DNA of 32,251 bases from Octopus bimaculoides (lineage: Eukaryota): assembly GCF_001194135.2 (NCBI RefSeq), contig NC_068981.1, positions 9,431,844 through 9,464,094 of the forward strand, given 5' to 3'. This document shows, one piece after another, positions 8,137 to 32,039 of this stretch; position 1 is the stretch's first letter, and each line of letters opens with the position of its first letter. A program made the translations under genes and the position numbers. A model generated the notes under the pieces. The model was not told the DNA's origin. It saw only the letters and a list, made by a program, of their open reading frames with translations, and made no database searches.

Positions 8137-8844
8137 NNNNNNNNNNNNNNNNNNNNNNNNNNNNNNNNNNNNNNNNNNNNNNNNNNNNNNNNNNNNNNNN
8201 NNNNNNNNNNNNNNNNNNNNNNNNNNNNNNNNNNNNNNNNNNNNNNNNNNNNNNNNNNNNNNNNNNNNNNNNNNNNNNNNNNNNNNNNNNNNNNNNNNNN
8301 NNNNNNNNNNNNNNNNNNNNNNNNNNNNNNNNNNNNNNNNNNNNNNNNNNNNNNNNNNNNNNNNNNNNNNNNNNNNNNNNNNNNNNNNNNNNNNNNNNNN
8401 NNNNNNNNNNNNNNNNNNNNNNNNNNNNNNNNNNNNNNNNNNNNNNNNNNNNNNNNNNNNNNNNNNNNNNNNNNNNNNNNNNNNNNNNNNNNNNNNNNNN
8501 NNNNNNNNNNNNNNNNNNNNNNNNNNNNNNNNNNNNNNNNNNNNNNNNNNNNNNNNNNNNNNNNNNNNNNNNNNNNNNNNNNNNNNNNNNNNNNNNNNNN
8601 NNNNNNNNNNNNNNNNNNNNNNNNNNNNNNNNNNNNNNNNNNNNNNNNNNNNNNNNNNNNNNNNNNNNNNNNNNNNNNNNNNNNNNNNNNNNNNNNNNNN
8701 NNNNNNNNNNNNNNNNNNNNNNNNNNNNNNNNNNNNNNNNNNNNTCACTGACGTTATTACTGTTATTTCTTTATTTTCTGCAAAATGCACAAAAAAGCTA
8801 CACGTTTGCATTATGTTATATATACAATAATAATAAAGGACAGG

Positions 8845-10148
8845 AAGTTAGTTTTTGTTTGTGGCAGATGTTCAGGTGCAGTAAAGACTGTAAATGTGCA
8901 GAAAACAACTGCAGTCTCATTCCAAGGAGAAAAACTAGACGTAGTTGATAGCTTCCGCTATCTGGGTGACCAAGTTAGTAGTGGGGGTGGGTGCGCTGAA
9001 AGTGTAGCCGCTAGAATAAGAATAGCCTGGGCAAAGTTCAGAGAGCTCTTACCTCTGCTGGCGACAAAGGGCCTCTCACTCAGAGTAAAAAGCAGACTGT
9101 ATGACGCATGTGTACGAACAGCCATGCTACATGGCAGTGAAACATGGGCTGTGACTGCTGAGGACATGCGTAAGCTCGCAAGGAATGAAGCCAGTATGCT
9201 CCGATGGATGAGTAATGTCAGTGTGTATACCTGTCAGAGTGTAAGTATCTTGAGAGAAAAGTTGAGCCTAAGAAGCATCAGTTGTGGTGTGCAAGAGAGA
9301 CAATTGCGCTGGTATGGACATGTGGTGAGAATGGATGAGGATAGCTGTGTGAAAAAGTGCCACACCCTACTGGTTGAGGGAACCCATGGAAGAGGCAGGC
9401 CTAGGAAGACCTGGGATGAGGTGGTGAAGCACGGCCTCCGAACATTAGGCCTCACCGAAGCAATGACTTGTGACCAAGACATTTGGAAATATGCTGTGCA
9501 TGAGAAGACTCGGCAAGCCAAGTGAGACCAAAATCCAAGGCTTCTGCCAGGGATGTAGCCAGCCTACTTACGCGTAACATTCCTTCATTGGACACTAAAC
9601 TCCGCTTGCGAAGACCTGTTGAGGCAAGTGAAATTGAAATTGAATTAAATTTGTAGGAACACTAAACTCGGCTTGCGAAGACCTGTTGGGGCTATCGAAA
9701 TCGTGATGGCACCTGTACCAGTGGAGCACTAAGAGCACCGTCCGAGCGTGATCGTTGCCAGAGCCGCTGCCTGGCTTCCGTGCCAGTGGCACGTAAATAG
9801 CACCAGCGTGATCGTTATCAACGTCGCCTTCCTTGCACGTGAAAAGACATTCGAGCGAGATCATTGCCAGTACCAATGGACTGGCTCCTGTGTAGGTGAC
9901 AACGTAAAATACACCATTTCGAGCGTGGACGTTGCCAGTACCGCCTGACTGGCCTTCATGCCAGTGGCACGTAAAAGCACCCACTACACTCTCGGATTGG
10001 TTGGCGTTAGGAAGGGCATCCAGCTGTAGAAACTCTACCAAATCAGATTGGAGCCTGGTGTAGCCACCTGGTCCACCAGTCCTCAGTCAAATCGTCCAAC
10101 CCATGCTAGCATGGAAAGTGGACGTTAAACGATGATGATGATGATGAT
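8845..10148 (+). mobile_element. RTE LINE, 5'-truncated: open C-terminal ORF, about 620-nt 3'UTR and (GAT)n tail
   Basis: ORF 8785-9525 contains SFRYLGDQV, RIAWAKFRELLPLL, MLHGSETW, RQLRWYGHVVRM and GRGRPRKTW, typical of the RTE post-RT region. The UTR matches the dispersed short copies. Confidence 0.92.
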
Positions 10149-10150
10149 GT

Positions 10151-12298: not shown

Positions 12299-13535
12299 TC
12301 AGGTCATTAAGAATGAAATGTTCTATTTTCTTATGCACCAAGTTTGACAGTCATTAACTCTAATGTTTTATCCTGACAATTCTTTGAAGAGTTACACCAA
12401 TACTTTTCGAAATGCAATTCATGGTGTCTGATTATATTCAGAATTTTCTCTAGTAAATCAGTTTTTGTGAACCCATGGATGGATCAAGAATTTGTGTTGT
12501 TTATGAATACCTCCTGGACAGCTTGAAACATCAATGAGGTAGGTGTTTGATGAAGATGTGGCAAATGAGCACACTTTATGTCGTTGATTTGAGAAGTTCC
12601 GGTCTGGTGACTTTGCTCTTGAAAATCAGCCCCGTGGCAGACTTCAGACCAAGATGGATAATGATGAGCTGGAAACAGTAGTGGAAGTGGATTCATCTCA
12701 AACTACACATGAGTAAGCAACAAGGGTTGATGTTTCGATTTCAACTGTATTGGACCATCTGAAACAAATCGGCAAGGTAAAGAAGTTGGACAAGTGGGTG
12801 CCACGTGAACTGAACAAGAATCAAATGACACTTCGTCTTAAAACTTACCGTTCTTTGCTATGACAGCATAAAAGTGAACCATTTTTGCATTGTATTATTA
12901 CGTGTGATGGAAAATAGATTCTTTTCAACAATAGCAAGTGTTCTGCACAGTGGCTGGATTGAGATGAAGTGCCAAAACAAAGAATATTCACCAAAAAAAG
13001 CTAATGGTGTCTGTTTGGTGGTCCAGTGCTGGTGTCGTCCACTACAGCTTCATGAGACCTGATAAGTCAATTACAGCAGATGTATACGTCAACCAATTGG
13101 ATGAAATGAGGAATGAACTTGCAATTAAACAACCAAGATCGGTCAACAGAGACAGGCCAAGTCTCTTGCATGACAATGCTCGACCACATGATGCACAAAG
13201 AACATTACTCATGTTACAGGAACTGAACTTGGAAGCACTCTGTCATCCATCATATTCACCAGACCTTGCACCAACTGACTATCACATTTTCCAGGCATTA
13301 GTCAACTTTTTGCAAGGAAAAAACTTCAAATCTGAAGAAGATGCAAAAACAACCTTTTATGATTTCATCACCTCTTGCTCTCCAGAATTCTTCACTGCTG
13401 GCATAAATAAGGGACCGATAAAATGACAAAAATGTGTTGATAATTTAGGTGCATACTTTGATTAACTGCATTGCTTTTTGTTGGGTAAATTACACTTTCA
13501 GTTCAAAATTGGACATTTCATTCTTAATGACCTGA
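12299..13535 (+). mobile_element. Full-length mariner transposon (D,D34D type), defective transposase
   Basis: 31-bp TIRs with 2 mismatches (tcaggtcattaagaatgaaatgt...) and TA on both sides. ITCDGK*ILF near 12895, HDNARPH and HPSYSPDLAPTDY in ORF 13004-13426. In-frame stops and frameshifts. Confidence 0.95.
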
Positions 13536-21887: not shown

Positions 21888-21987
21888 NNNNNNNNNNNNN
21901 NNNNNNNNNNNNNNNNNNNNNNNNNNNNNNNNNNNNNNNNNNNNNNNNNNNNNNNNNNNNNNNNNNNNNNNNNNNNNNNNNNNNNNN
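21888..21987. other. 100-N assembly gap, possibly of unknown size
   Basis: Exactly 100 N. Other gaps: 5919-6018 (100 N), 8137-8745, 15116-15652, 17349-17908, 18490-18857 and 25290-25299. Confidence 0.95.
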
Positions 21988-22643
21988 TACTAGTCTTACA
22001 AAGATTAAGTGCTGGGGTTGATTTGTTTGACTAAAGCAAGCGCTCCAGCATGGCCACAGTCAAAAGACTGAAACAAATAAAAGAATATTACTTTGACTTG
22101 TAGTTGCAGGCATGGCTGCATGGTTGAGAAGTTTACTTCACAAACATATGTGTTAAAAAAATTCCAGCTGTTATCTGTGGATGAGCATGACTGGGTAACA
22201 TGTACCATGCTTTCACTAATTGTTTTAGGTGCCTGTGTAATCATGAACTGACATAAACAACCTCTTGACTCTCCCATCCTGCGACCAAACAGCACATCTA
22301 GGATATGATTTTTGGAAGGAGAAAGGGCTGCATCAGCCCCCGGTTGGTGCTCATTTTCAGCTAAGTAGGTTGGAGCAATGTGTAATGAAGTACATTACTC
22401 AAGGGCACAATGTGCTGCCTAACTCAGGAATTGAACCTATGGCATCACGATTGTGAGTCAGACACTCTAACCACTAGACCATGTGTCTTCAAAAAATACA
22501 CACACATATAATGTGTGTGTATTACATATATAATGGGCTTCTTTAAGTTTCCATCCATCAAATTCACTTACATCATCATCATCGTTTAACGTCCGCTATT
22601 TTTATATAATATTGTTAAGCAACTCCTTTATTTTATTCTTCAG

Positions 22644-22681
22644 GTAATGAAATTCATTGAGAAACGATCAAAAGAATGCAA
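22644..22681 (+). CDS. GPN1: GPN-loop GTPase 1, internal exon (VMKFIEKRSKECK)
   Basis: ttcttcag acceptor and gt donor, 38 nt. Matches recalled human VMKFIEKAQNMSK and is phase-compatible with the next exon. Confidence 0.85.
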
Positions 22682-22697
22682 GTACATATACCTTTTA

Positions 22698-23143
22698 ATC
22701 ATCATCATCATCATCGTTTAATGTCCGCTTTCCATGCTAGCATGGGTTGGACGATTTGACTGAGGACTGGCGAACCAGATGGCTGCACCAGGCTCCAATC
22801 CGATCTGGCAATGGTTCTACAGCTGGATGCCCTTCCTAACGCCAACTACTCCGAGAGTGTAGTAGGTGCTTTTACATGCCACTGGTACGAAGGCCAGTCA
22901 GGCTGTTCTGGCAATGGCCACGCTCAAAATGGTGTATTTTACGTGCCACCTGCTATGGAGCCAGTCCAGCGGCACTGGCAACGATCCCACTTGAATGTCT
23001 TTTCATGTGCCACTGGCACAAGTGCCAGTAAGGCAACGCTGGTAACGATCACGCTCAAATGGTGCTATTTACGTGCTATTGGCATGGAAGCCAGACAGCT
23101 GCTCTGGCAATGATCACGCTCGGACAGTGCTCTTAGCACTTCA
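22698..23143 (-). mobile_element. RTE 3' end
   Basis: (atc)6 tail and about 440 nt of reverse-complement 3'UTR. Confidence 0.88.
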
Positions 23144-23289
23144 CTTAGCCCCAACAGGTCTTGTTTTGTAATTATTTATCAAATATATTACCTATGTTTT
23201 GCTGTGGTTGAGAAGATACTTCAAGCGCTAAATAAAATCATGGTTGTCCTTGCATATAAGCTTGTCCCCTACATCCCTCTTCTGCTGAC

Positions 23290-23527
23290 CGCTCCTAATC
23301 TTGCAGGCTGGTGGGTGCTGGTGCCACATTAAGAAGGATCCATACCAGTGCCACATAAAGGCACCTGTGCTGGTGCTGCATAAAAGTGCCCAGTGCACTC
23401 TGTAAAGTGGTTGGTGCAAGGAAGCACATCCAGCTGTAGAAACCATGCCAGACATGGAGCCTGGACAGCTGCTATCAAACTGTCCAACCCATGCCAGCAT
23501 GGAAAACCGACATTAAATGATGATGTT
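23290..23527 (+). mobile_element. RTE 3' end, diverged
   Basis: 3'UTR similarity and gat tail. Confidence 0.7.
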
Positions 23528-23796
23528 TCAATTTAGCTAAAATTGAAGTTTTTGGTTCCACAATGGTTGAAGTTCTGTCAGTTTTATGCAATTACTCCAT
23601 CCTTTATCTTGCTCCTTTTACTTGATTCGGTCATTGGACTGTGGCCATGCTGGAGCACTGCCTTGAATGAATTGACCCTCACAACTTATTTTCTAAGTCT
23701 GGTACTTATTCTGTTTGTCTCTTGCCGAACCACTAAGTTATGGGGGCATAACACAAAGACGCACACAACAGGTTTCTGTTTTCTTTTTTTTCTTTT

Positions 23797-24114
23797 AGAG
23801 GGGCACTCTGTTGGTTACGACGATGAGGGTCCCAGCTGATATGGTCAACGGAACAGCTTGCTCATGAAATTAACGTGCAAGTGGCTGAGCACTCCACAGA
23901 CACGTGTACCCTTAACGTAGTTTTCAGGGAGATTCAGCATGACACAGAGTGTGACAAGGCCGGCCCTTTGAAATACAGGTACTACTCACTTTTGCCAGCT
24001 GAGTGGACTGGAGCAACGTGAAATAAAGTGTCTTGCTCAAGGACACAACACGTCGTGGGGAATTGAACTCACGACCTTACAATCGTGGGCCGAATACCCT
24101 AACCACTAAGCCAC
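23797..24114 (-). mobile_element. tRNA-derived SINE (family S3)
   Basis: Minus strand has A box TGGCTTAGTGG and B box GTTCAATTCC. Partial copies near 22320-22480 and 27640-27740. Confidence 0.75.
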
Positions 24115-24347
24115 ATTTCTACACAGTCTCCGTCTACCAAATTTATTCTCAAGGCATTGGTTGGCCTGGAGCTATATTAGAAGACACCTGCCCATGGTGC
24201 CCCATGGTGGGACTGAACCTAGAATCATGTTATTTAAGAGTTTATAAGTTCTATCTCATCTTGCTACCTAAATATATATTGCTATGTTTATAAACAGAAT
24301 TGAATCATAATGAAAACTTGTTACTTTGATGGCCTTTTATTTTGTAG

Positions 24348-24426
24348 GTATGTTATTTTGGACACACCTGGTCAAATTGAAGTATTCACTTGGTCAGCAT
24401 CTGGAAGTATTATCACAGAGGCTCTT
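24348..24426 (+). CDS. GPN1: GPN-loop GTPase 1, exon with the G3 motif ([26 protein letters not shown])
   Basis: [15 protein letters not shown] is diagnostic for GPN1. tttgtag acceptor and gtaagt donor, 79 nt. Confidence 0.96.
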
Positions 24427-24467
24427 GTAAGTAAATCCATACAGTATCATGTATTATTTTAAATATT

Positions 24468-24850
24468 TCATCATCATCATCATCATTTAACGTCCGTTGT
24501 CCATGCTGGCATGGGTTGGACAGTTTGGTTGGGCTGGCACACTGGAAGGCTGCACCAGACTCCATTCTGATTTAGCATGGTTTTCTATGGGTGGTTGCCC
24601 TTTCTAATGCCAACCACTCTGAGAGTGTAATGAGTGCTTTTCTGTGCCACCAGCATGGGTGCTATATGCATGACACCAGGTACTTTTATGTGCCACTGGC
24701 ACAGGTGCCAATTTGCATGACACTGATATCTGTCACAACTGTGATTTTGCTTGGCTTGTTGGGTCTTCGTCTCAAGCACGACATCATGCCAAAGGTCTTG
24801 GTCATTGCCTCCGTGAGGCCCAACACTCAAAAGGAACTCAGCCACTTTGT
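24468..24850 (-). mobile_element. RTE 3' end
   Basis: (cat)6 tail, 3'UTR and the ORF end in reverse orientation. Confidence 0.8.
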
Positions 24851-24957
24851 TTTTGTATTTGGTTTTCAAGATCCTTGGTGTGAATTCATGGTTGAAACAG
24901 ATTTTATTGTATATTGAGAGAGCCGTTATGCTTACAGATTGTTTGATTAATATAGCA

Positions 24958-25390
24958 CAGGAGTGGCTGTGTGGTAAGTAGCTTGCTTACCAACCACATT
25001 GTTCCAGGTTCATTCCCACTGTGTGGCACCTTGGGCAAGTGTCTTCTACTATAGCCTCGGGCCGACCAAAGCCTTGTGAGTGGATTTGGTAGACGGAAAC
25101 TGAGAGAAGCCTGTCGTATGTATATGTATGTATATGTTTGTGTGTCCGTGTTTGTCCCCCAGCATCGCTTGACAACTAATGCTGGTGTGTTTACGTCCCC
25201 TTAACTTAACGGTTCGGCAAAATAGACCGATAGAATAAGTACTAGGCTTCCAAAGAATAAGTCCTGGGCTTGATTTGCTCGACTAAAGGNNNNNNNNNNA
25301 AGAATAAGTCCTGGGCTTGATTTGCTCGACTAAAGGCGGTGCTCCAGCATGGCCACAGTCAAATGACTGAAACAAGTAAAAGTAAAATTA
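24958..25390 (+). mobile_element. SINE (family S2) with CORE-like centre and 3' tail module
   Basis: Head gagtggctgtgtggtaag...ggttcattcc, centre caccttgggcaagtgtcttctac. Related copies at 17957, 29280 and 29615. Confidence 0.7.
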
Positions 25391-25849
25391 TTTGGTCAGT
25401 CAGTCAATCATCTTGGTTTGCCTGATTGATTGATTGATTGACTGAATGATTGATCAAACAATTGATTATTTAAGTGGTTAAACAGTTAAGTACTTGACTG
25501 ATAATAATAACCCTTTCTGCTATCGGCACAAGGCCTGAAGTTTTTGGGGAGGGGACTAGTCGATTTCATAGACTCCAGTGTTCAACTGGTACTCTCATCT
25601 ACCCCTCCCAAAAAAAAAGATGAAAGACAAAGTCAACCTCAACCAAATTTGAACCCAGATCATAAGATGGACGAAGTGCTACTAAGCATTTTGTCTGGTG
25701 TGTTAACAGTTCTGCCAGTGTGTGTTTCTTATTGGCATGATGGCCCTCCCACTATACAACAAAATTATTTAAAATCATTATGAATTATCGGAATGCTGAT
25801 AGCATTGTCAAAAGTTCAAACTCTGCCTCAGTTATGCTCTAAAGCTCAC

Positions 25850-26250
25850 AGGCAAAGTACCTTATTTCATTTGCTGCAAAGACCTGTTGGGGCAAGTGAA
25901 AGCAAAATCGTGATGGCTCCTGTGCCCAGCATCACCTTCCAGGCACATATAAGACATTCGAGCGAGATCGTTGCCAGTGCCGCTGGACTGGCTCCTGTGC
26001 AGGTGGCACGTAAAATACACCATTTTGAGCATGGCCGTTGCCAGTACCGCCTGACCGGCCTTTGTGCTGGTGGCACATAAAAGCATCCACTACATTCTCG
26101 GAGTGGTTGGCGTTAGGAAGGGCATCCAGCTGTAGAAACGCTGCCAAATCAGATTGGAGCCTGGTGTAGCCATCTGGTTCACCAGTCCTCAGTCAAATCA
26201 TCCAACCCATGCTAGCATGGAAAGCGGACGTTAAACGATGATGATGATGT
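25850..26250 (+). mobile_element. RTE 3' end
   Basis: High similarity to 9620-10148, with (gat)n tail. Confidence 0.88.
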
Positions 26251-26625
26251 ATGTGGTTGTCAACATACATATTTCAGTGTTTAGCTCAAATATGAAGATT
26301 TCAGTTGTAAAATAATTTGCTCAATACTCAAACATCATGTTACAATTTTATCGTCAGAATTGGTTAAAAAAAGCAAAAAAGAAAACAGAACAATACAGTT
26401 GTGGAATATTAATTTCCAAAGCTTCTTTTAAGACATTGAAATCATTTTTTAAGGTTATTTTCTTTTGTTCATTTCATTTTGGAAATATACTCCATTTTCT
26501 GGTCTACTAATTGATGCAGTCTAATAGCGTTAACATGATTTGTAAACGTCCAAACACCGTTACTATTTTGCCAAATCCTGCTGCATTTCACATGGAATTT
26601 TTGATCCTCCAAAGTTGCCTTGGTG

Positions 26626-26744
26626 TATAAATATGCATCCACTGCGACCAACATATATCCAGAAATGTAGTGCAGCTTCTTCAAAGACTGACAAAGAACC
26701 AGGACTTCAGATGCAGTAAAGATATACCAGAATAGTTAAGTAGC
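26626..26744. repeat. Left arm of a 119-bp inverted repeat
   Basis: Reverse complement of 27886-28004, ungapped, 15 mismatches by manual count. Confidence 0.9.
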
Positions 26745-26970
26745 TCTTTCGCTGTAAATTTAAGTCTGAAAAATTCGATTTGTATTCCAGAAAAAATGGT
26801 AAGTCAAGTTATAGGATAAACGTTGCTTGTATTCAGAATTGTCACGAAACTTGATTGTATTTAATTAAATCTCTAAATTTAATTAGCTCTCATTTTCCTC
26901 CTTATAATTTAATATTTAGTTTTGTGATATTTTGAAGAAAGTATTAATTAAAATTTTCGTATATTTGGAG

Positions 26971-27083
26971 GCATCTTCATTTCCTCACGCAGTCTCAGTC
27001 CCGTCACATTTATGTCCAACATGCTCTACGCCTGCAGTATCCTGTACAAATCTAAGTTGCCATTTATTGTTGTGATGAACAAA
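26971..27083 (+). CDS. GPN1: GPN-loop GTPase 1 exon with an apparent 28-nt frameshifting deletion
   Basis: ASSFP in one frame, then [32 protein letters not shown] in another, donor gtaagt. 113 nt against 141 nt expected. Confidence 0.9.
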
Positions 27084-27412
27084 GTAAGTAAATCATCATC
27101 ATCATCATCGTCATTGTTTCATCATCTCATTGATTTTTGTGATGGTTTTGTGACTGGGTTAGATCAGTGGTTCTCAACTGGGGTCCACATAAGATTCTGT
27201 TGTTAAAATTTTATGTGCAATAAATTGGTTATATTTCTACAATACACAAAATATTTAGTTTTTTTTTTTATACAAAACCTAATAGCCACAGTTTATGTTC
27301 CTAACACTAGCTTAATGATGACTAAGTTATTTTACTAAATTCTTCACAGAGCATCTCAAAATAAATACAGTAACGAAAGGGTTAAAATGTATAATAGAGA
27401 AACGATTCATAA

Positions 27413-27632
27413 CCCTTTTGATACCAACCCGGCTGAAACTGGCTCTGGCTTTGAGTACAAATGTCTTGTTTCCATAAGTTTTGAATTAAAATCTTCCACC
27501 AAACCTTAGTCACAATTTATGTTGCTAACACTTACTGAATGATAACTAAGTTATTTTACTAAATTCTTTGTTATATTTAAAGTAATCGAATGAAACGCAG
27601 AACATCTCAACAGAAATACAGTAACAAAAGGG
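27413..27632. mobile_element. 220-bp piggyBac-like MITE
   Basis: CCCT...AGGG termini with ataa/ttaa flanks. Similar to 30197-30417. A partial copy lies at about 27285-27381. Confidence 0.75.
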
Positions 27633-27885
27633 TTAATGTAGTTCTCAAGGAGATTCCTATGTAACACACAGTGTAACAAGGTTAACCCTTTGAACTACAA
27701 GTACACCTCATTTTTGCCAGCTGAGTGGACTGGAGCAATGTCCAGTTACTATTCTAGTTACTATATTTTCCACTAAAACTATTACTTTGTCCATCTGCAG
27801 TACTAATTAGGTCACCTACCAACATGAAGTCTTATACCTGGTTAGCTATCTGAGCAATTTAAAGACTCATTTCATGGAAACTTCT

Positions 27886-28004
27886 GCTACTTAATTACTC
27901 CTGTATATCTTTGTTATATCAGAAGTCCTGGTTCTTTGTCGGTCTTTGCAGAAGCTGCACTGCATTTCTGGGTATCTGTTGGTCGCAGTGGATGCGTATT
28001 TATA
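27886..28004. repeat. Right arm of the 119-bp inverted repeat
   Basis: Reverse complement of 26626-26744. Confidence 0.9.
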
Positions 28005-28699
28005 AGTTCTTGGAGCATTTTCAGGAGCTCATTCACTGATTCTGCAATAAGATCCAGCTTGTAAAAAGTTTCCAAAGATATTCTGAACTTCTGCTTTTCT
28101 CGTCTTAAGATTTTTTAAGGAATTGAAGGAAGTGCAAAAACAATGTCCCAATAAACCAACACACATTGATTTCTTCGAATTCCTCCCCTATGTCATCCAT
28201 CGACACTTAATGTCCTTAGAACGTGAGAACGGACCTCCCATGTATTTTCTTTCCTCTTCACTTTATTATATATGACTATATTTCTTACATTCTTCCGGTA
28301 TACTTAAATTAGATCAAATTTAGTAAAATCGTCACGAGTTGTCTCCCATGCTTGCATAATTGCTATTTATAATTCTGGTCATTATCTAATGTATTTTTCT
28401 CATTACTTAATTTTTCTAATTTGCTTTTTGATAGTCATTGATTAAATATGTTAACATCAGCTTCTAAAATACAGAATGTTATAAACCGTCATTAGTTTTT
28501 TTGCTTGTACCTCAAAGTCTTTTTCTATAGAAAATTAATCTTGTAACTTGTAAATACAAACACTTCAGTTTATAAATGAATGTTAAATAGAAATTTGGCT
28601 CATGATGTGTTTATACATAATGTTAAATAAAATATATGTTATGAATATTATATATGTTTAATGTCTCCTTTGATATAATAATCATTAATATAATATGCA

Positions 28700-28880
28700 A
28701 ACAAAGTGGTAAGATGGCATCTTTTCGTCCTTTATATTCTGAATGCAAATTTTGCCTAGGTTGACTTAGCCTTTCATCCTTTCAAGGTTGATAAAAAAAG
28801 TACCAGTTGAGTACTGGGGTCGACATAATCGACTTAGCTCCTCTCCACAATTGCTGGCCTTGTTCTAACATTTGAAACCA
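28700..28880 (+). mobile_element. SINE family S1, diverged
   Basis: ttgacttagcctttcatcctttc...gtaccagttgagtactggggtcgacataatcgac matches the S1 body. Confidence 0.6.
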
Positions 28881-29397
28881 GTGTAATATGCAAAATCTCA
28901 TTTCATTGGGTTCCCCTATTTATTGGTAAAGTAGAGTGGTTGTGTAACTCTGTACAAGAGTGAATCTTCTGGTAGATCGCTGTGAACTGGCTCATTGGGC
29001 CACTCTTTGAGCTCAGATGTTTAACAAGGTTGTTATTCATAAGATTGCGTATTTGAAACAATAGTTTATAAAGCAATTACAAAGGCTCATGTACATTTAT
29101 TCTCTTTAACACTTTAGCATTTAAACTGGCCCTATCGGCCCAAATATCTTAATTGTTCAGTGTTCAAACTGGCCCCTTCCAACCTCTCTCATCAAGTCCA
29201 CCATCTCATTCTAAAAATAAGCAGTCACATCATTGAAATCTCAAAGCTATGATATAATAGCATGATTAACCCAAAACAATAGGTTCAGTCCCACTGTGTG
29301 ACACTTTGGGCAGGTCTCTTATACTTTGGCCATGGGCCAACTGAAGCCTTGTGAATGGATTCGGTAAATGGAAACATAAAGAAACCTGTAGTTTTAT

Positions 29398-30135
29398 CAT
29401 CATCATTGTTATTATCATTTAACGTCCGTTTTCCATGCTAGCATGGGTTGGACAGTTTAACCAGAGCTGGTAAAGCCAGAGGCCACACTGGGCTCCATTG
29501 TCTGTTCTGACAAGGTTTCTACGGCTGGATGCCCTTCCTAATGACAACCATTCCACAGAGTGTACTGGGTGCTTTTTATGTGGCACCAGCACCAGTATCA
29601 ATTCTGCTGTACAGCACGGAACCTTGAACAAGTGTCTGTTACTATAGCCTCAGGCTGACCAAAGCCTTGTGAGTGAATTTGGTAGACAGAAACTGAAAGA
29701 ACCTCATCGTATATGTGTGTGTGTGTCTTTGTCCCCACCCTATTGCTTGACTTTAGTGTTGGTGTGTTTATGTCCCTGTAACTTAGTGGTTTGGCAAAAG
29801 AAATTGACAGAATAAGTATTAGGTTTCAAAAAAAGGTCCTGGGGTCGATTCATTTGACTAAAATTCTTCAAGGTGGTGCCCCAGCATGGCCACAGTCTAA
29901 TGACTGAAAAATGTAAAAGATATATATGTGTGATTTTGTGTTTGTCCCACACAGCCACTTGACTAGCAATGTTGGTGTGTTTACATCCCTGTAACTTAGG
30001 AGTTCAGCAAAAGAGACAAAAATATAAAAAGTACCAGATTTGAAAAAGATAAGTTCTGGGGTCAATTCGTTTGACAAACTGTTCTTCAAGGCAGTGCCCC
30101 AGCATGGCCGCATTCTAATGACTGAAACAAATAAA
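29398..30135. mobile_element. RTE 3' end (-) followed by S2 SINE and two tandem tail modules (+)
   Basis: RTE tail 29398-29610. Module 29745-29915 is repeated at 29935-30135. Confidence 0.65.
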
Positions 30136-30196
30136 AGAAAAGATAAAAATAAGCCTTTACATTTGACACAGTAATCTGAATGCCAAAGGGATTTGA

Positions 30197-30417
30197 CCCT
30201 TTCATTACCAATCTGGCTGAAACTGGCTCTGGCTCTGAGTACAAATGTCTTGTTTTCATAAGTTTTGAATCAAAATTTCCCACCAAACTTTAGTCACAAT
30301 TTATGTTCCTAACACTAGCTTAATGATAACTAAGTTAATTTTACTAAATTCTTTGTTATATTTAAAGTAATTGAAAGAAATACAGAGCATCTCAACAGGA
30401 ATACAGTAACGAAAGGG
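30197..30417. mobile_element. 221-bp piggyBac-like MITE
   Basis: ttga-CCCT...AGGG-ttaa. Same family as 27413-27632. Confidence 0.75.
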
Positions 30418-30528
30418 TTAACCTCTCTCCATCTGTCCCGTAGCCTGTATGCTATCTACACGGATACATTTTAGCTCCTTCATTACCCATTGTTTCTCTT
30501 GTTTTTTTTTTCTTTTTTTTTGGTGCAG

Positions 30529-30675
30529 ACAGATATTGTGAGCCATGAATTTGCAGTGGAATGGATGACTGACTTTGAGACTTTTGAAGAAGCCTTACAG
30601 AATGAAACTTCATACATTTCAAACTTGACAAGGTCTATGAGTTTAGTCTTGGATGAATTTTACACTAACCTTAAG
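30529..30675 (+). CDS. GPN1: GPN-loop GTPase 1, internal exon ([49 protein letters not shown])
   Basis: Long T-tract acceptor, AAG|gtaaat donor, 49 codons. AVEWM.DF and [15 protein letters not shown] are diagnostic. Confidence 0.96.
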
Positions 30676-30708
30676 GTAAATCAGAGTTTACTTCTTCAAT
30701 GTACATCT

Positions 30709-31288
30709 TCATCATGATGATGATCATCATCATCATCATCATCATCATATGACCTTTTTGCCCATACTAGCATGGGTTAGATGGTTTGACAAGAACAGTG
30801 GGCCTCACCGAAGCGATGACAAGTGACGGAGACCTTTGGAGATATGCTGTGCTTGAGAAGACCCGGCAAGCCAAGTAAGACTGTAACTGTGGCCTATGCC
30901 AGTGCAGTATAACCAACCCATTTAAGAGTACCCTTCAATCATTGAGCAATAAACTGCACTTGCGAAGACCTGTTGAGGCAAGTGAAGTCGTCGTCGTGGC
31001 TGATGACAGTACTCTGATTGGCACTCGTGCTGGTGGCATGTAAAAAGCACCATTTGAGCGTGGTTGTTGCCAGTGTCGCCTGACTAGCTCCTGTGCCAGT
31101 GGCACATAAAAAGCACTATTCAAGTGTGGCCAATGCCAGTACTGCCTGACTGGCCCTCGTGCCAGTAGCACTTAAAAAGCACTCACGGAGTGGTTGGCAT
31201 TAGGCCTCCTGGCTTGCCAGTCCTCAATCAAACCATCCGACTCATGCCAGCATGGAAAGCGGACAGTAAATGATGATGATGATGATGG
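30709..31288. mobile_element. Back-to-back RTE 3' ends: short (-) copy joined to a longer (+) copy
   Basis: (atc)n tail plus about 45 nt reverse-complement UTR to about 30800, then ORF end, UTR and (gat)n tail on +. Confidence 0.75.
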
Positions 31289-31672
31289 TACTTATTTTAA
31301 CGGCCCTATAAAAGATGAAAGACAAAGTCAACCTCGGCAGAATTTGAACTCAGGACGTGAAGATGGATGAAATACCAACTTGTTGCCTTAATAATAACAG
31401 CTAGCTGACCCTGTGGATATTCCGTGATTTGATTAGAAGCGACCATCTAGTGTTAAATTATCATCTGTGTTTGCATGTGTGTGCCAAGAGCATTTGTATT
31501 TGTGTGTGTACCAATAGTTTATATCTGTGTGAGTGCGTGTCTGTTTCTAGCACAGATATTTATCATCTCACCACTTTAATCTAATATAAGATAAATTGAT
31601 AGGAAGATGTGTGTGTGTGTGTATGCCTGTAACATTTGTGTGAATCTCTCTTTTTCTTTCCCTCTCTGTCAT

Positions 31673-31710
<38 letters not shown>

Positions 31711-32039
31711 ACTTTACTATCTCCTTTCCACAATATGACAGATTAACACCACAGATTGTTTACACAGATCTGTCATTAGATTATTGCTGTTGCCCTAAGG
31801 GTCAATAATCCAAGAACCACCAGTTGGGGGTCAGTGTAACCCTTTCCTTATGATTCTTCTTTCCTGTCTTTCTTTTATCTCATTTCGGAAAAGATGGCCG
31901 ACTGTAGCAAGAGTGTTGAGAATAAATGAACCTGTTTGAGCGAGAAATTAAAGAGTTTAACAAAGGGTTCAGTGTTGGAATGTGGTTTGTGGGGTCGGCC
32001 ACGTGCCTCACTTTATAATTATGTTTTTCATTCATTTCT

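What the first reader, a model, noticed from the sequence alone, without database searches (positions are those of the whole stretch)
26971..27083. 28-nt frameshifting deletion in a core exon of normally essential GPN1
Seen: after an AG the exon reads gca tct tca ttt cct (ASSFP), then ca cgc agt ctc agt ccc gtc aca ttt atg (RSLSPVTFM) in a different frame. The recalled human segment is 47 aa (141 nt) and this exon is 113 nt, so TVVIYVMDT plus 1 nt is missing. Reading through hits TGA at 27073-27075. A better-looking acceptor (ttcctcacgcag, 26992) is also out of frame with the previous exon. Known: GPN1 is needed for RNA polymerase II biogenesis and is essential in yeast. The flanking exons look intact. 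Inference: assembly error, heterozygous null allele, young pseudogene copy, or a split exon whose 50-nt first part lies elsewhere.
Basis: partly seen in the sequence, partly recalled or inferred. Interest (0 to 1): 0.72.

Follow-up and report, generated by a model that had tools for sequence, protein, structure and literature searches.

The report
Frameshifting 28-nt gap in octopus GPN1
One exon of the essential GPN1 gene in this draft octopus genome lacks 28 bases that three other octopus species keep, but this looks like a recent local defect of the assembled copy (assembly error, one bad allele or a dead duplicate), not a species living without GPN1.

Summary
The window holds exons 5-8 of an octopod GPN1 gene. 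It is collinear, introns included, with the GPN1 loci of Octopus vulgaris, O. sinensis and O. bimaculoides.

Exon 7 is 141 nt in all three species and 113 nt here. Exactly 28 nt are missing (codons TV(I/V)VYIMDI plus 1 nt). That removes a buried beta-strand with invariant Tyr and Asp, shifts the frame and gives TGA at 27073-27075. No alternative splice site restores a usable frame, and the lost piece is nowhere else in the window. The "split exon" idea is therefore rejected.

The lesion is young. Exons 6-8 carry 1.2% window-specific substitutions against 3.5% in non-coding sequence. The five substitutions within 30 nt of the deletion are mostly transversions, against 21% elsewhere. One of them turns the acceptor CAG into GAG. 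Deletion and neighbours therefore look like one local event.

The assembly is gap-ridden, and exons 1-4 are missing upstream of a 100-N gap. Without reads I cannot separate an assembly error (favoured, about 0.5) from a real null allele or a recent partial duplicate. Biological interest is low.

The parts
22644..22681 (+). GPN1 exon 5 (VMKFIEKRSKEC + 2 nt), acceptor ttcag, donor gtacat; intact
   Evidence: 100% protein identity to O. vulgaris residues 121-134, with two synonymous differences
24348..24426 (+). GPN1 exon 6 ([26 protein letters not shown], holds the G3 motif DTPGQ), ends in phase 0; intact
   Evidence: nucleotide-identical to O. vulgaris and O. sinensis, with no window-specific change
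26955..26970 (+). Damaged 3' splice site of exon 7: ttttCCtCtatttgCAG in three species, ttttCGtAtatttgGAG here (C>G 26959, C>A 26961, C>G 26968 at position -3)
   Evidence: all 8 O. vulgaris GPN1 acceptors that could be resolved are YAG
26971..27083 (+). GPN1 exon 7, 113 nt instead of 141 nt; ASSFP in frame, the rest frameshifted; also V>L (26994) and T>S (27051)
26985..26986 (+). Deletion junction: 28 nt (TVIVYIMDI + 1 nt) missing between these bases; placement ambiguous by one T (1-nt microhomology); no longer direct repeat at the ends
   Evidence: the deleted residues form strand E166-172 of the O. vulgaris model and include invariant Y170 and D173
26980..26992 (+). Good-looking acceptor tttcctcacgcag created by the deletion; out of frame with exon 6 and runs into TAA
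   Evidence: my own reading of the frames
27073..27075 (+). Premature TGA reached when exon 7 is read from its normal acceptor
30529..30675 (+). GPN1 exon 8 (TDIVSHEF...EFYTNLK), splice sites intact; one conservative change V>I (30616)
21888..21987 (.). 100-N gap 650 nt upstream of exon 5; collinearity with the O. vulgaris GPN1 locus starts only at 22539, and nothing upstream matches exons 1-4 or their introns

Best explanation
The window carries the middle of an octopod GPN1 gene (exons 5-8) in a fragmented short-read draft assembly. Exon 7 has one young, local lesion: a clean 28-nt deletion flanked by an unusual cluster of transversions, one of which also destroys the exon's acceptor. As assembled, this copy cannot make GPN1. 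The frame shifts after ASSFP, a stop follows 29 codons later, and a buried beta-strand with invariant Tyr and Asp is gone even if the frame were restored. GPN1 is essential, and the rest of this locus still shows purifying selection. The lesion therefore does not describe the animal's working gene. I think it most likely arose in the assembly itself, for example error-rich contig or read ends joined falsely during gap closure, with the real exon being 141 nt. Shown: the deletion, its consequences, the orthology, the youth of the lesion and the odd substitution spectrum. Inferred: that the cause is technical.
For: The deletion is exact and unique to the window against three species. Window-specific substitutions are 4 in 339 nt in exons 6-8 against 93 in 2659 nt elsewhere, so constraint held for most of this lineage's history. 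Within 30 nt of the junction, 4 of 5 window-specific substitutions are transversions, against 19 of 92 elsewhere (Fisher p = 0.011). These are the only runs of five consecutive substitutions with at least 4 transversions among 93 runs. That fits random errors better than ordinary lineage substitutions. The assembly is poor: seven N runs in 32 kb and contigs of 0.6-7 kb. GPN1 exons 1-4 are absent upstream of a 100-N gap, although O. vulgaris has them within 10.2 kb of exon 5. The same locus in O. bimaculoides is also broken up, on an unplaced 12-kb contig with a 4.1-kb gap. GPN1/Npa3 is described as essential for Pol II biogenesis (PMC3002788, PMC12612918). The deleted strand is conserved from yeast Npa3 (TVIAYIVD) to human.
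Against: The junction lies 1.7 kb from the nearest N run and has only 1 nt of microhomology. There is no repeat that would make a de Bruijn graph collapse. The scaffolder seems to leave at least 10 N at small gaps (25290-25299) instead of fusing contigs. A clean 28-nt deletion with 1-nt microhomology is also what end-joining repair produces in real DNA, and clustered real mutations are also transversion-rich (my own knowledge, not tested here). No reads were available, so a technical origin is not demonstrated. The transversion excess was noticed after the fact.
Confidence: 0.5

Rival explanations
1. A real null allele. The sequenced animal is heterozygous for a complex deletion (28 nt lost plus nearby substitutions from error-prone break repair), and the assembler happened to keep that haplotype. 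The other allele is intact and supplies GPN1.
For: The deletion is clean, with 1-nt microhomology, in unique sequence and away from gaps. The flanking exons and splice sites are intact and conserved, so the lesion is young. A single complex event would explain the transversion cluster and the damaged acceptor together.
Against: A heterozygous loss-of-function allele in any one essential gene is rare per individual. Five extra substitutions in one repair event is a lot. Nothing in the window shows a second haplotype.
Confidence: 0.22
2. A recent partial DNA-level duplicate of GPN1 (exons 5-8 and onward, with introns) that is decaying, while the intact parent gene lies elsewhere in the genome.
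For: Exons 1-4 are absent, and the 21.9 kb upstream is not collinear with the GPN1 5' region of O. vulgaris; only repeats match. There is a disabling deletion plus a GAG acceptor. On the window branch there are 3 non-synonymous changes to 1 synonymous, against 1 to 9 on the other branches (Fisher p = 0.04).
Against: The loss of collinearity coincides with a repeat block and a 100-N scaffold join, so it can be technical. Window-specific change in exons 6-8 is only a third of the intron rate, which excludes a copy that has been dead for most of the branch. The three amino-acid changes are conservative. Two of them fall at positions that vary among the functional GPN1s retrieved: I in SYI in P0008, and Y, L or R at the KTK position in P0013, P0035 and P0008. 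No second copy was seen in any collection.
Confidence: 0.2
3. The deletion is real, fixed and sits in the only GPN1 gene. Function is rescued by unusual splicing, frameshifting or another GPN paralogue.
For: Nothing positive. It is only not formally excluded without reads and transcripts.
Against: No AG/GT combination restores the frame while keeping the conserved part. The only in-frame acceptor (ctaag|TTG at 27057) leaves 9 codons (my reading). A -1 slip at TTT CCT CA would restore SRSL, but the site is not an X XXY YYZ heptamer, and the product would still lack strand 166-172 with invariant Y170 and D173. Skipping exon 7 is in frame but removes 47 residues, including NK of the G4 motif. Exons 6 and 8 remain under constraint.
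Confidence: 0.02
4. A split exon: the first part of exon 7 (ASSFPTVVVYIMDIS) lies elsewhere as a separate small exon, and cacgcag at 26992 is the true acceptor.
For: tttcctcacgcag looks like a good acceptor.
Against: The 15 nt before it are the orthologous start of exon 7, preceded by the orthologous intron. The acceptor is out of frame with exon 6. The lost 28 nt or peptide is not found in the window with up to 8 mismatches or by peptide pattern.
Confidence: 0.01

Closest known systems
GPN-loop GTPase 1 of Octopus vulgaris (CAI9715804.1, P0296) and O. sinensis (XP_029639534.2, P0355); 387 aa, 12 coding exons
   Same: Exons 5-8 are collinear, introns included, over 9.7 kb at 85-91% DNA identity. 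Exon 6 is nucleotide-identical, with the same exon phases and splice sites.
   Different: The window's exon 7 lacks 28 nt and has a GAG acceptor. There are three conservative amino-acid differences. Exons 1-4 are not present upstream, and exons 9-12 lie beyond the window.
GPN-loop GTPase 1-like, partial, of Octopus bimaculoides (XP_014788602.2, P0001; contig LGKD02119490.1)
   Same: This is the closest sequence found, at 92-94% identity in aligned blocks. It shares three synonymous states in exon 8, and it too sits in a fragmented short-read assembly.
   Different: Its exon 7 is an intact 141 nt with a CAG acceptor. SINE insertions around the locus differ in place and orientation, so it is a separate lineage.
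Human GPN1 (PDB 9t5j chain B) and yeast Npa3 (PDB 5hci, 5hcn)
   Same: Same family. The octopus protein matches at E = 4e-140 and 2e-101. The segment lost here is conserved as TVVIYVMD in human and TVIAYIVD in yeast.
   Different: Those are complete, functional GTPases. The window copy as assembled encodes at most a truncated product.
Unprocessed (duplicated) pseudogene, or a segregating loss-of-function allele
   Same: There is a disabling frameshift and a damaged splice site in an otherwise recognisable gene that keeps its introns.
   Different: No neutral decay is seen in exons 6 and 8. A functional partner copy or allele has not been seen (not testable here).

Membership tests
GPN-loop GTPase 1 (GPN1/XAB1/Npa3; Pfam PF03029) | Sequence match to the family profile | tested here: met
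   The conceptual exon 5-7 product hits PF03029 at E = 2e-10. The joined exons hit GPN1 proteins at E down to 2e-58.
GPN-loop GTPase 1 (GPN1/XAB1/Npa3; Pfam PF03029) | Orthologous position: collinear exons and introns with annotated octopus GPN1 | tested here: met
   Window 22539-32039 is collinear with L002 20140-34546. The four-way exon alignments agree.
GPN-loop GTPase 1 (GPN1/XAB1/Npa3; Pfam PF03029) | P-loop (GxxGxGKS/T) and GPN motif present | tested here: not met
   No exon 1-4 sequence was found in any frame of the window. These exons may lie in gaps or on other scaffolds.
GPN-loop GTPase 1 (GPN1/XAB1/Npa3; Pfam PF03029) | G3 (DTPGQ) and G4 (NKxD) motifs in one continuous reading frame | tested here: not met
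   DTPGQ (exon 6) and NK|TD (exons 7/8) are both present, but the 28-nt deletion separates them by a frameshift and a TGA at 27073.
Processed pseudogene (retrocopy) | No introns; poly(A) remnant | tested here: not met
   The introns are present and orthologous.
Unprocessed or duplicated pseudogene | Disabling lesion | tested here: met
   There is a 28-nt frameshifting deletion and a CAG>GAG acceptor.
Unprocessed or duplicated pseudogene | Neutral evolution of the exons (exon rate about equal to intron rate, dN/dS near 1) | tested here: inconclusive
   The exon rate is 1.2% against 3.5% in non-coding sequence, so an old pseudogene is excluded. N:S of 3:1 against 1:9 gives p = 0.04 on very few sites.
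Unprocessed or duplicated pseudogene | An intact parent copy elsewhere in the same genome | not testable with these tools
   No eukaryotic genome or read collection for this species was available. Exact look-ups found nothing.
Assembly artefact | Lesion at a gap, a repeat or a low-complexity tract | tested here: not met
   The nearest N run is 1.7 kb away and the microhomology is 1 nt. The (ATC)n run starts only after the donor.
Assembly artefact | Raw reads disagree with the assembled sequence | not testable with these tools
   No reads were available.
Programmed -1 ribosomal frameshift site | Slippery heptamer X XXY YYZ at the point where the frames change | tested here: not met
   The sequence at the junction is T TTC CTC A. 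Even a restored frame would lack strand 166-172.

The most novel reading that the evidence does not exclude
The 28-nt deletion is real and homozygous in the only GPN1 locus of this octopus species. An animal would then live without a canonical GPN1, or rescue it by an unknown RNA-level or translational mechanism.
Probability: 0.02. Interest if true: 0.8.

Novelty: new member of a known kind. Interest (0 to 1): 0.15.

Why it matters
If the lesion is an artefact, it matters only as a warning. This draft assembly breaks an essential, highly conserved gene, and annotation built on it would report GPN1 as truncated, missing or a pseudogene. If it is a real heterozygous allele, it is one example of the recessive lethal load of a wild marine invertebrate. 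If it is a duplicate, it is an ordinary young pseudogene. Only the very unlikely case of a fixed loss would bear on RNA polymerase II biogenesis.

Tried and rejected
- **Other octopus copies with or without the deletion.** I ran three protein searches: short exon plus intron read-through, the joined exons, and a long chimeric query. They found only O. bimaculoides, O. vulgaris and O. sinensis, all intact. No sequence from the window's own species turned up.
- **Exact look-ups.** I looked up window ORFs and seven guessed gene models. None is on record, so the species and assembly remain unidentified.
- **The lost 28 nt elsewhere in the window.** I searched the DNA with up to 8 mismatches and by peptide pattern and found nothing.
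- **Exons 1-4 in the window.** tblastn and motif scans found none.
- **Alternative splice sites or a ribosomal frameshift that could rescue the frame.** None gives a usable product (my reading).
- **Local clustering of substitutions as evidence.** The density is not unusual: other 60-nt stretches hold 6 substitutions. Only the spectrum is unusual.
- **SINE insertions to root the three lineages.** The insertions are independent and give no information.
- **Rfam and tRNA scans of the window.** No matches.
- **Single-sequence structure model.** Its confidence was too low, so I replaced it with an alignment-based model.

Full report
**What is in the window.**
The window is soft, AT-rich animal DNA with seven runs of N: 100, 608, 537, 559, 367, 100 and 10 bases. 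It is therefore a short-read draft scaffold with contigs of 0.6-7 kb. tblastn with a recalled human GPN1 found four GPN1 exons on the + strand. tblastn with the O. vulgaris protein retrieved later found the same four.

| Exon | Coordinates | Length |
|---|---|---|
| 5 | 22644-22681 | 38 nt |
| 6 | 24348-24426 | 79 nt |
| 7 | 26971-27083 | 113 nt |
| 8 | 30529-30675 | 147 nt |

Exons 5, 6 and 8 have YAG acceptors, and all four exons have GT donors. Exon 7's own acceptor is GAG (see below).

**Check of the observation.**
- Exon 6 ends in phase 0 (GCT CTT|gtaagt).
- Exon 7 opens in frame with GCA TCT TCA TTT CCT (ASSFP).
- The conserved continuation [32 protein letters not shown] is in another frame.
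- Reading through reaches TGA at 27073-27075.

**Related sequences.**
A protein search with the joined exons found a partial O. bimaculoides GPN1 (P0001, XP_014788602.2) as the best hit. A long query found the full-length O. vulgaris and O. sinensis proteins (P0296 and P0355, 387 aa). I fetched their loci: L001 (O. bimaculoides, an unplaced 12-kb contig with a 4.1-kb gap), L002 (O. vulgaris) and L003 (O. sinensis).

Window 22539-32039 is collinear with L002 20140-34546 at 85-91% identity, introns included. This is therefore an unprocessed GPN1 locus, not a retrocopy. The window is about equally far from O. bimaculoides (92-94% identity) and from O. vulgaris (89-92%). SINE insertions around the locus differ in all three. 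The window is thus a third octopod lineage. I could not name the species.

**The lesion.**
In the four-way alignment all three other species have a 141-nt exon 7. The window has one gap of exactly 28 nt between TTTCC(T) and (T)CACGCAG. The lost sequence encodes T166-I174 (O. vulgaris numbering) plus the first base of Ser175. Only a single T of microhomology flanks the junction, and the nearest N run is 1.7 kb away.

The lost residues are conserved from yeast Npa3 (TVIAYIVD) to human GPN1 (TVVIYVMD). They include the invariant Y170 and D173 of a 31-sequence alignment. In an alignment-based AlphaFold model they form strand E166-172, where the 10-residue block means of pLDDT are 92-94 over residues 151-170.

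The exon's own 3' splice site is also damaged. The other species have ttttcctctatttgCAG; the window has ttttcgtatatttgGAG. All eight O. vulgaris GPN1 acceptors that I could resolve are YAG.

**Can the copy still work?**
No route gives a usable product.
- The strong acceptor created by the deletion (26980-26992) is out of frame and runs into TAA.
- The only in-frame AG (27055-27056) leaves nine codons.
- A -1 slip at TTT CCT CA would restore SRSL, but the site is not a slippery heptamer. The product would still lack the core strand.
- Skipping exon 7 is in frame but removes 47 residues, including part of the G4 motif.
- The lost 28 nt is nowhere else in the window, so the split-exon idea fails.

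**How old is the lesion?**
On the window's own branch there are 4 substitutions in the 339 nt of exons 6-8 (1.2%). There are 93 in 2659 nt of other aligned sequence (3.5%). Exon 6 has none. Purifying selection therefore acted for most of this lineage's history, and a long-dead pseudogene is excluded.

The three amino-acid changes (V>L, T>S, V>I) are conservative. For two of them, the retrieved functional GPN1 proteins also vary at that position. The ratio of 3 non-synonymous to 1 synonymous change, against 1 to 9 on the other branches, is only weakly suggestive (p = 0.04).

**A clue to the mechanism.**
Substitution density near the junction is not unusual. The spectrum is. Four of the five window-specific substitutions within 30 nt of the junction are transversions: C>G, C>A, C>G and G>C. 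Elsewhere 19 of 92 are transversions (Fisher p = 0.011). These are the only such runs among 93. I noticed this after the fact.

It argues that the deletion, the acceptor damage and the V>L change belong to one local event and not to gradual divergence. That event could be technical, for example error-rich read or contig ends falsely joined during gap closure. It could also be biological, for example a complex end-joining repair.

**Context.**
No trace of exons 1-4 is present in the window, although O. vulgaris has them within 10.2 kb upstream of exon 5. Collinearity stops at 22539, in a repeat block just after a 100-N gap (21888-21987). The 21.9 kb further upstream matches the O. vulgaris locus only through repeats. 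It holds transposon debris, including a mariner-type transposase fragment at 13004-13426. This fits a scaffold misjoin or unassembled sequence. It would also fit a partial duplicate.

**Verdict.**
GPN1/Npa3 is needed for RNA polymerase II biogenesis and is described as essential (PMC3002788, PMC12612918, PMC13486763). The rest of the locus is still constrained. The lesion therefore almost certainly does not represent the animal's working gene.

| Explanation | Probability |
|---|---|
| Assembly artefact | about 0.5 |
| Real heterozygous complex null allele | about 0.22 |
| Recent partial duplicate that is decaying | about 0.2 |
| Fixed loss with some rescue | about 0.02 |
| Split exon | about 0.01 |

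Only reads or transcripts of this species can decide. Whichever applies, this is a known kind of thing and of low biological interest.

Noticed in passing
window 26956-27015: Four of five window-specific substitutions next to the deletion are transversions (three of them C<->G), against 21% transversions among 92 others. This suggests one complex event or local sequence error.
   Followed up: partly
window 1-21887: The whole upstream 22 kb is not collinear with the GPN1 5' region or the upstream neighbour (a protein-kinase gene) of O. vulgaris. It holds only transposon debris (mariner-type transposase fragment 13004-13426, RT-like ORF 8785-9525) and six contigs separated by N runs. This may be a scaffold misjoin at 21888-21987.
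   Followed up: partly
window 9700-10150, 22700-23136, 25942-26255 and others: There are many copies of a 300-450-nt SINE-like repeat headed by an (ATC)n run (catcatcatc gtttaacgtccgc tttccatgct agcatgggttggac). (ATC)n runs sit directly 3' of the donors of exons 5, 6, 7 and 8.
   Followed up: no
window 26247-26400; L001 1568-2035; L002 23187-23516: SINE copies are inserted at or next to the same intron-6 spot in three octopus lineages but in different positions or orientations. This suggests independent insertions at a hot spot.
   Followed up: partly
L001 (O. bimaculoides LGKD02119490.1): In the O. bimaculoides v2 assembly, GPN1 exons 6-8 sit on an unplaced 12-kb contig with a 4105-N gap. The RefSeq protein reads through the exon 8 donor into the intron (…[17 protein letters not shown]…). 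GPN1 is also badly assembled and annotated in that species.
   Followed up: no
window 26926-26927: A window-specific 9-nt deletion (TATGTTTCT) lies 45 nt upstream of the exon 7 acceptor. It is the second largest of 11 window-specific deletions in 3 kb of three-way alignment.
   Followed up: no
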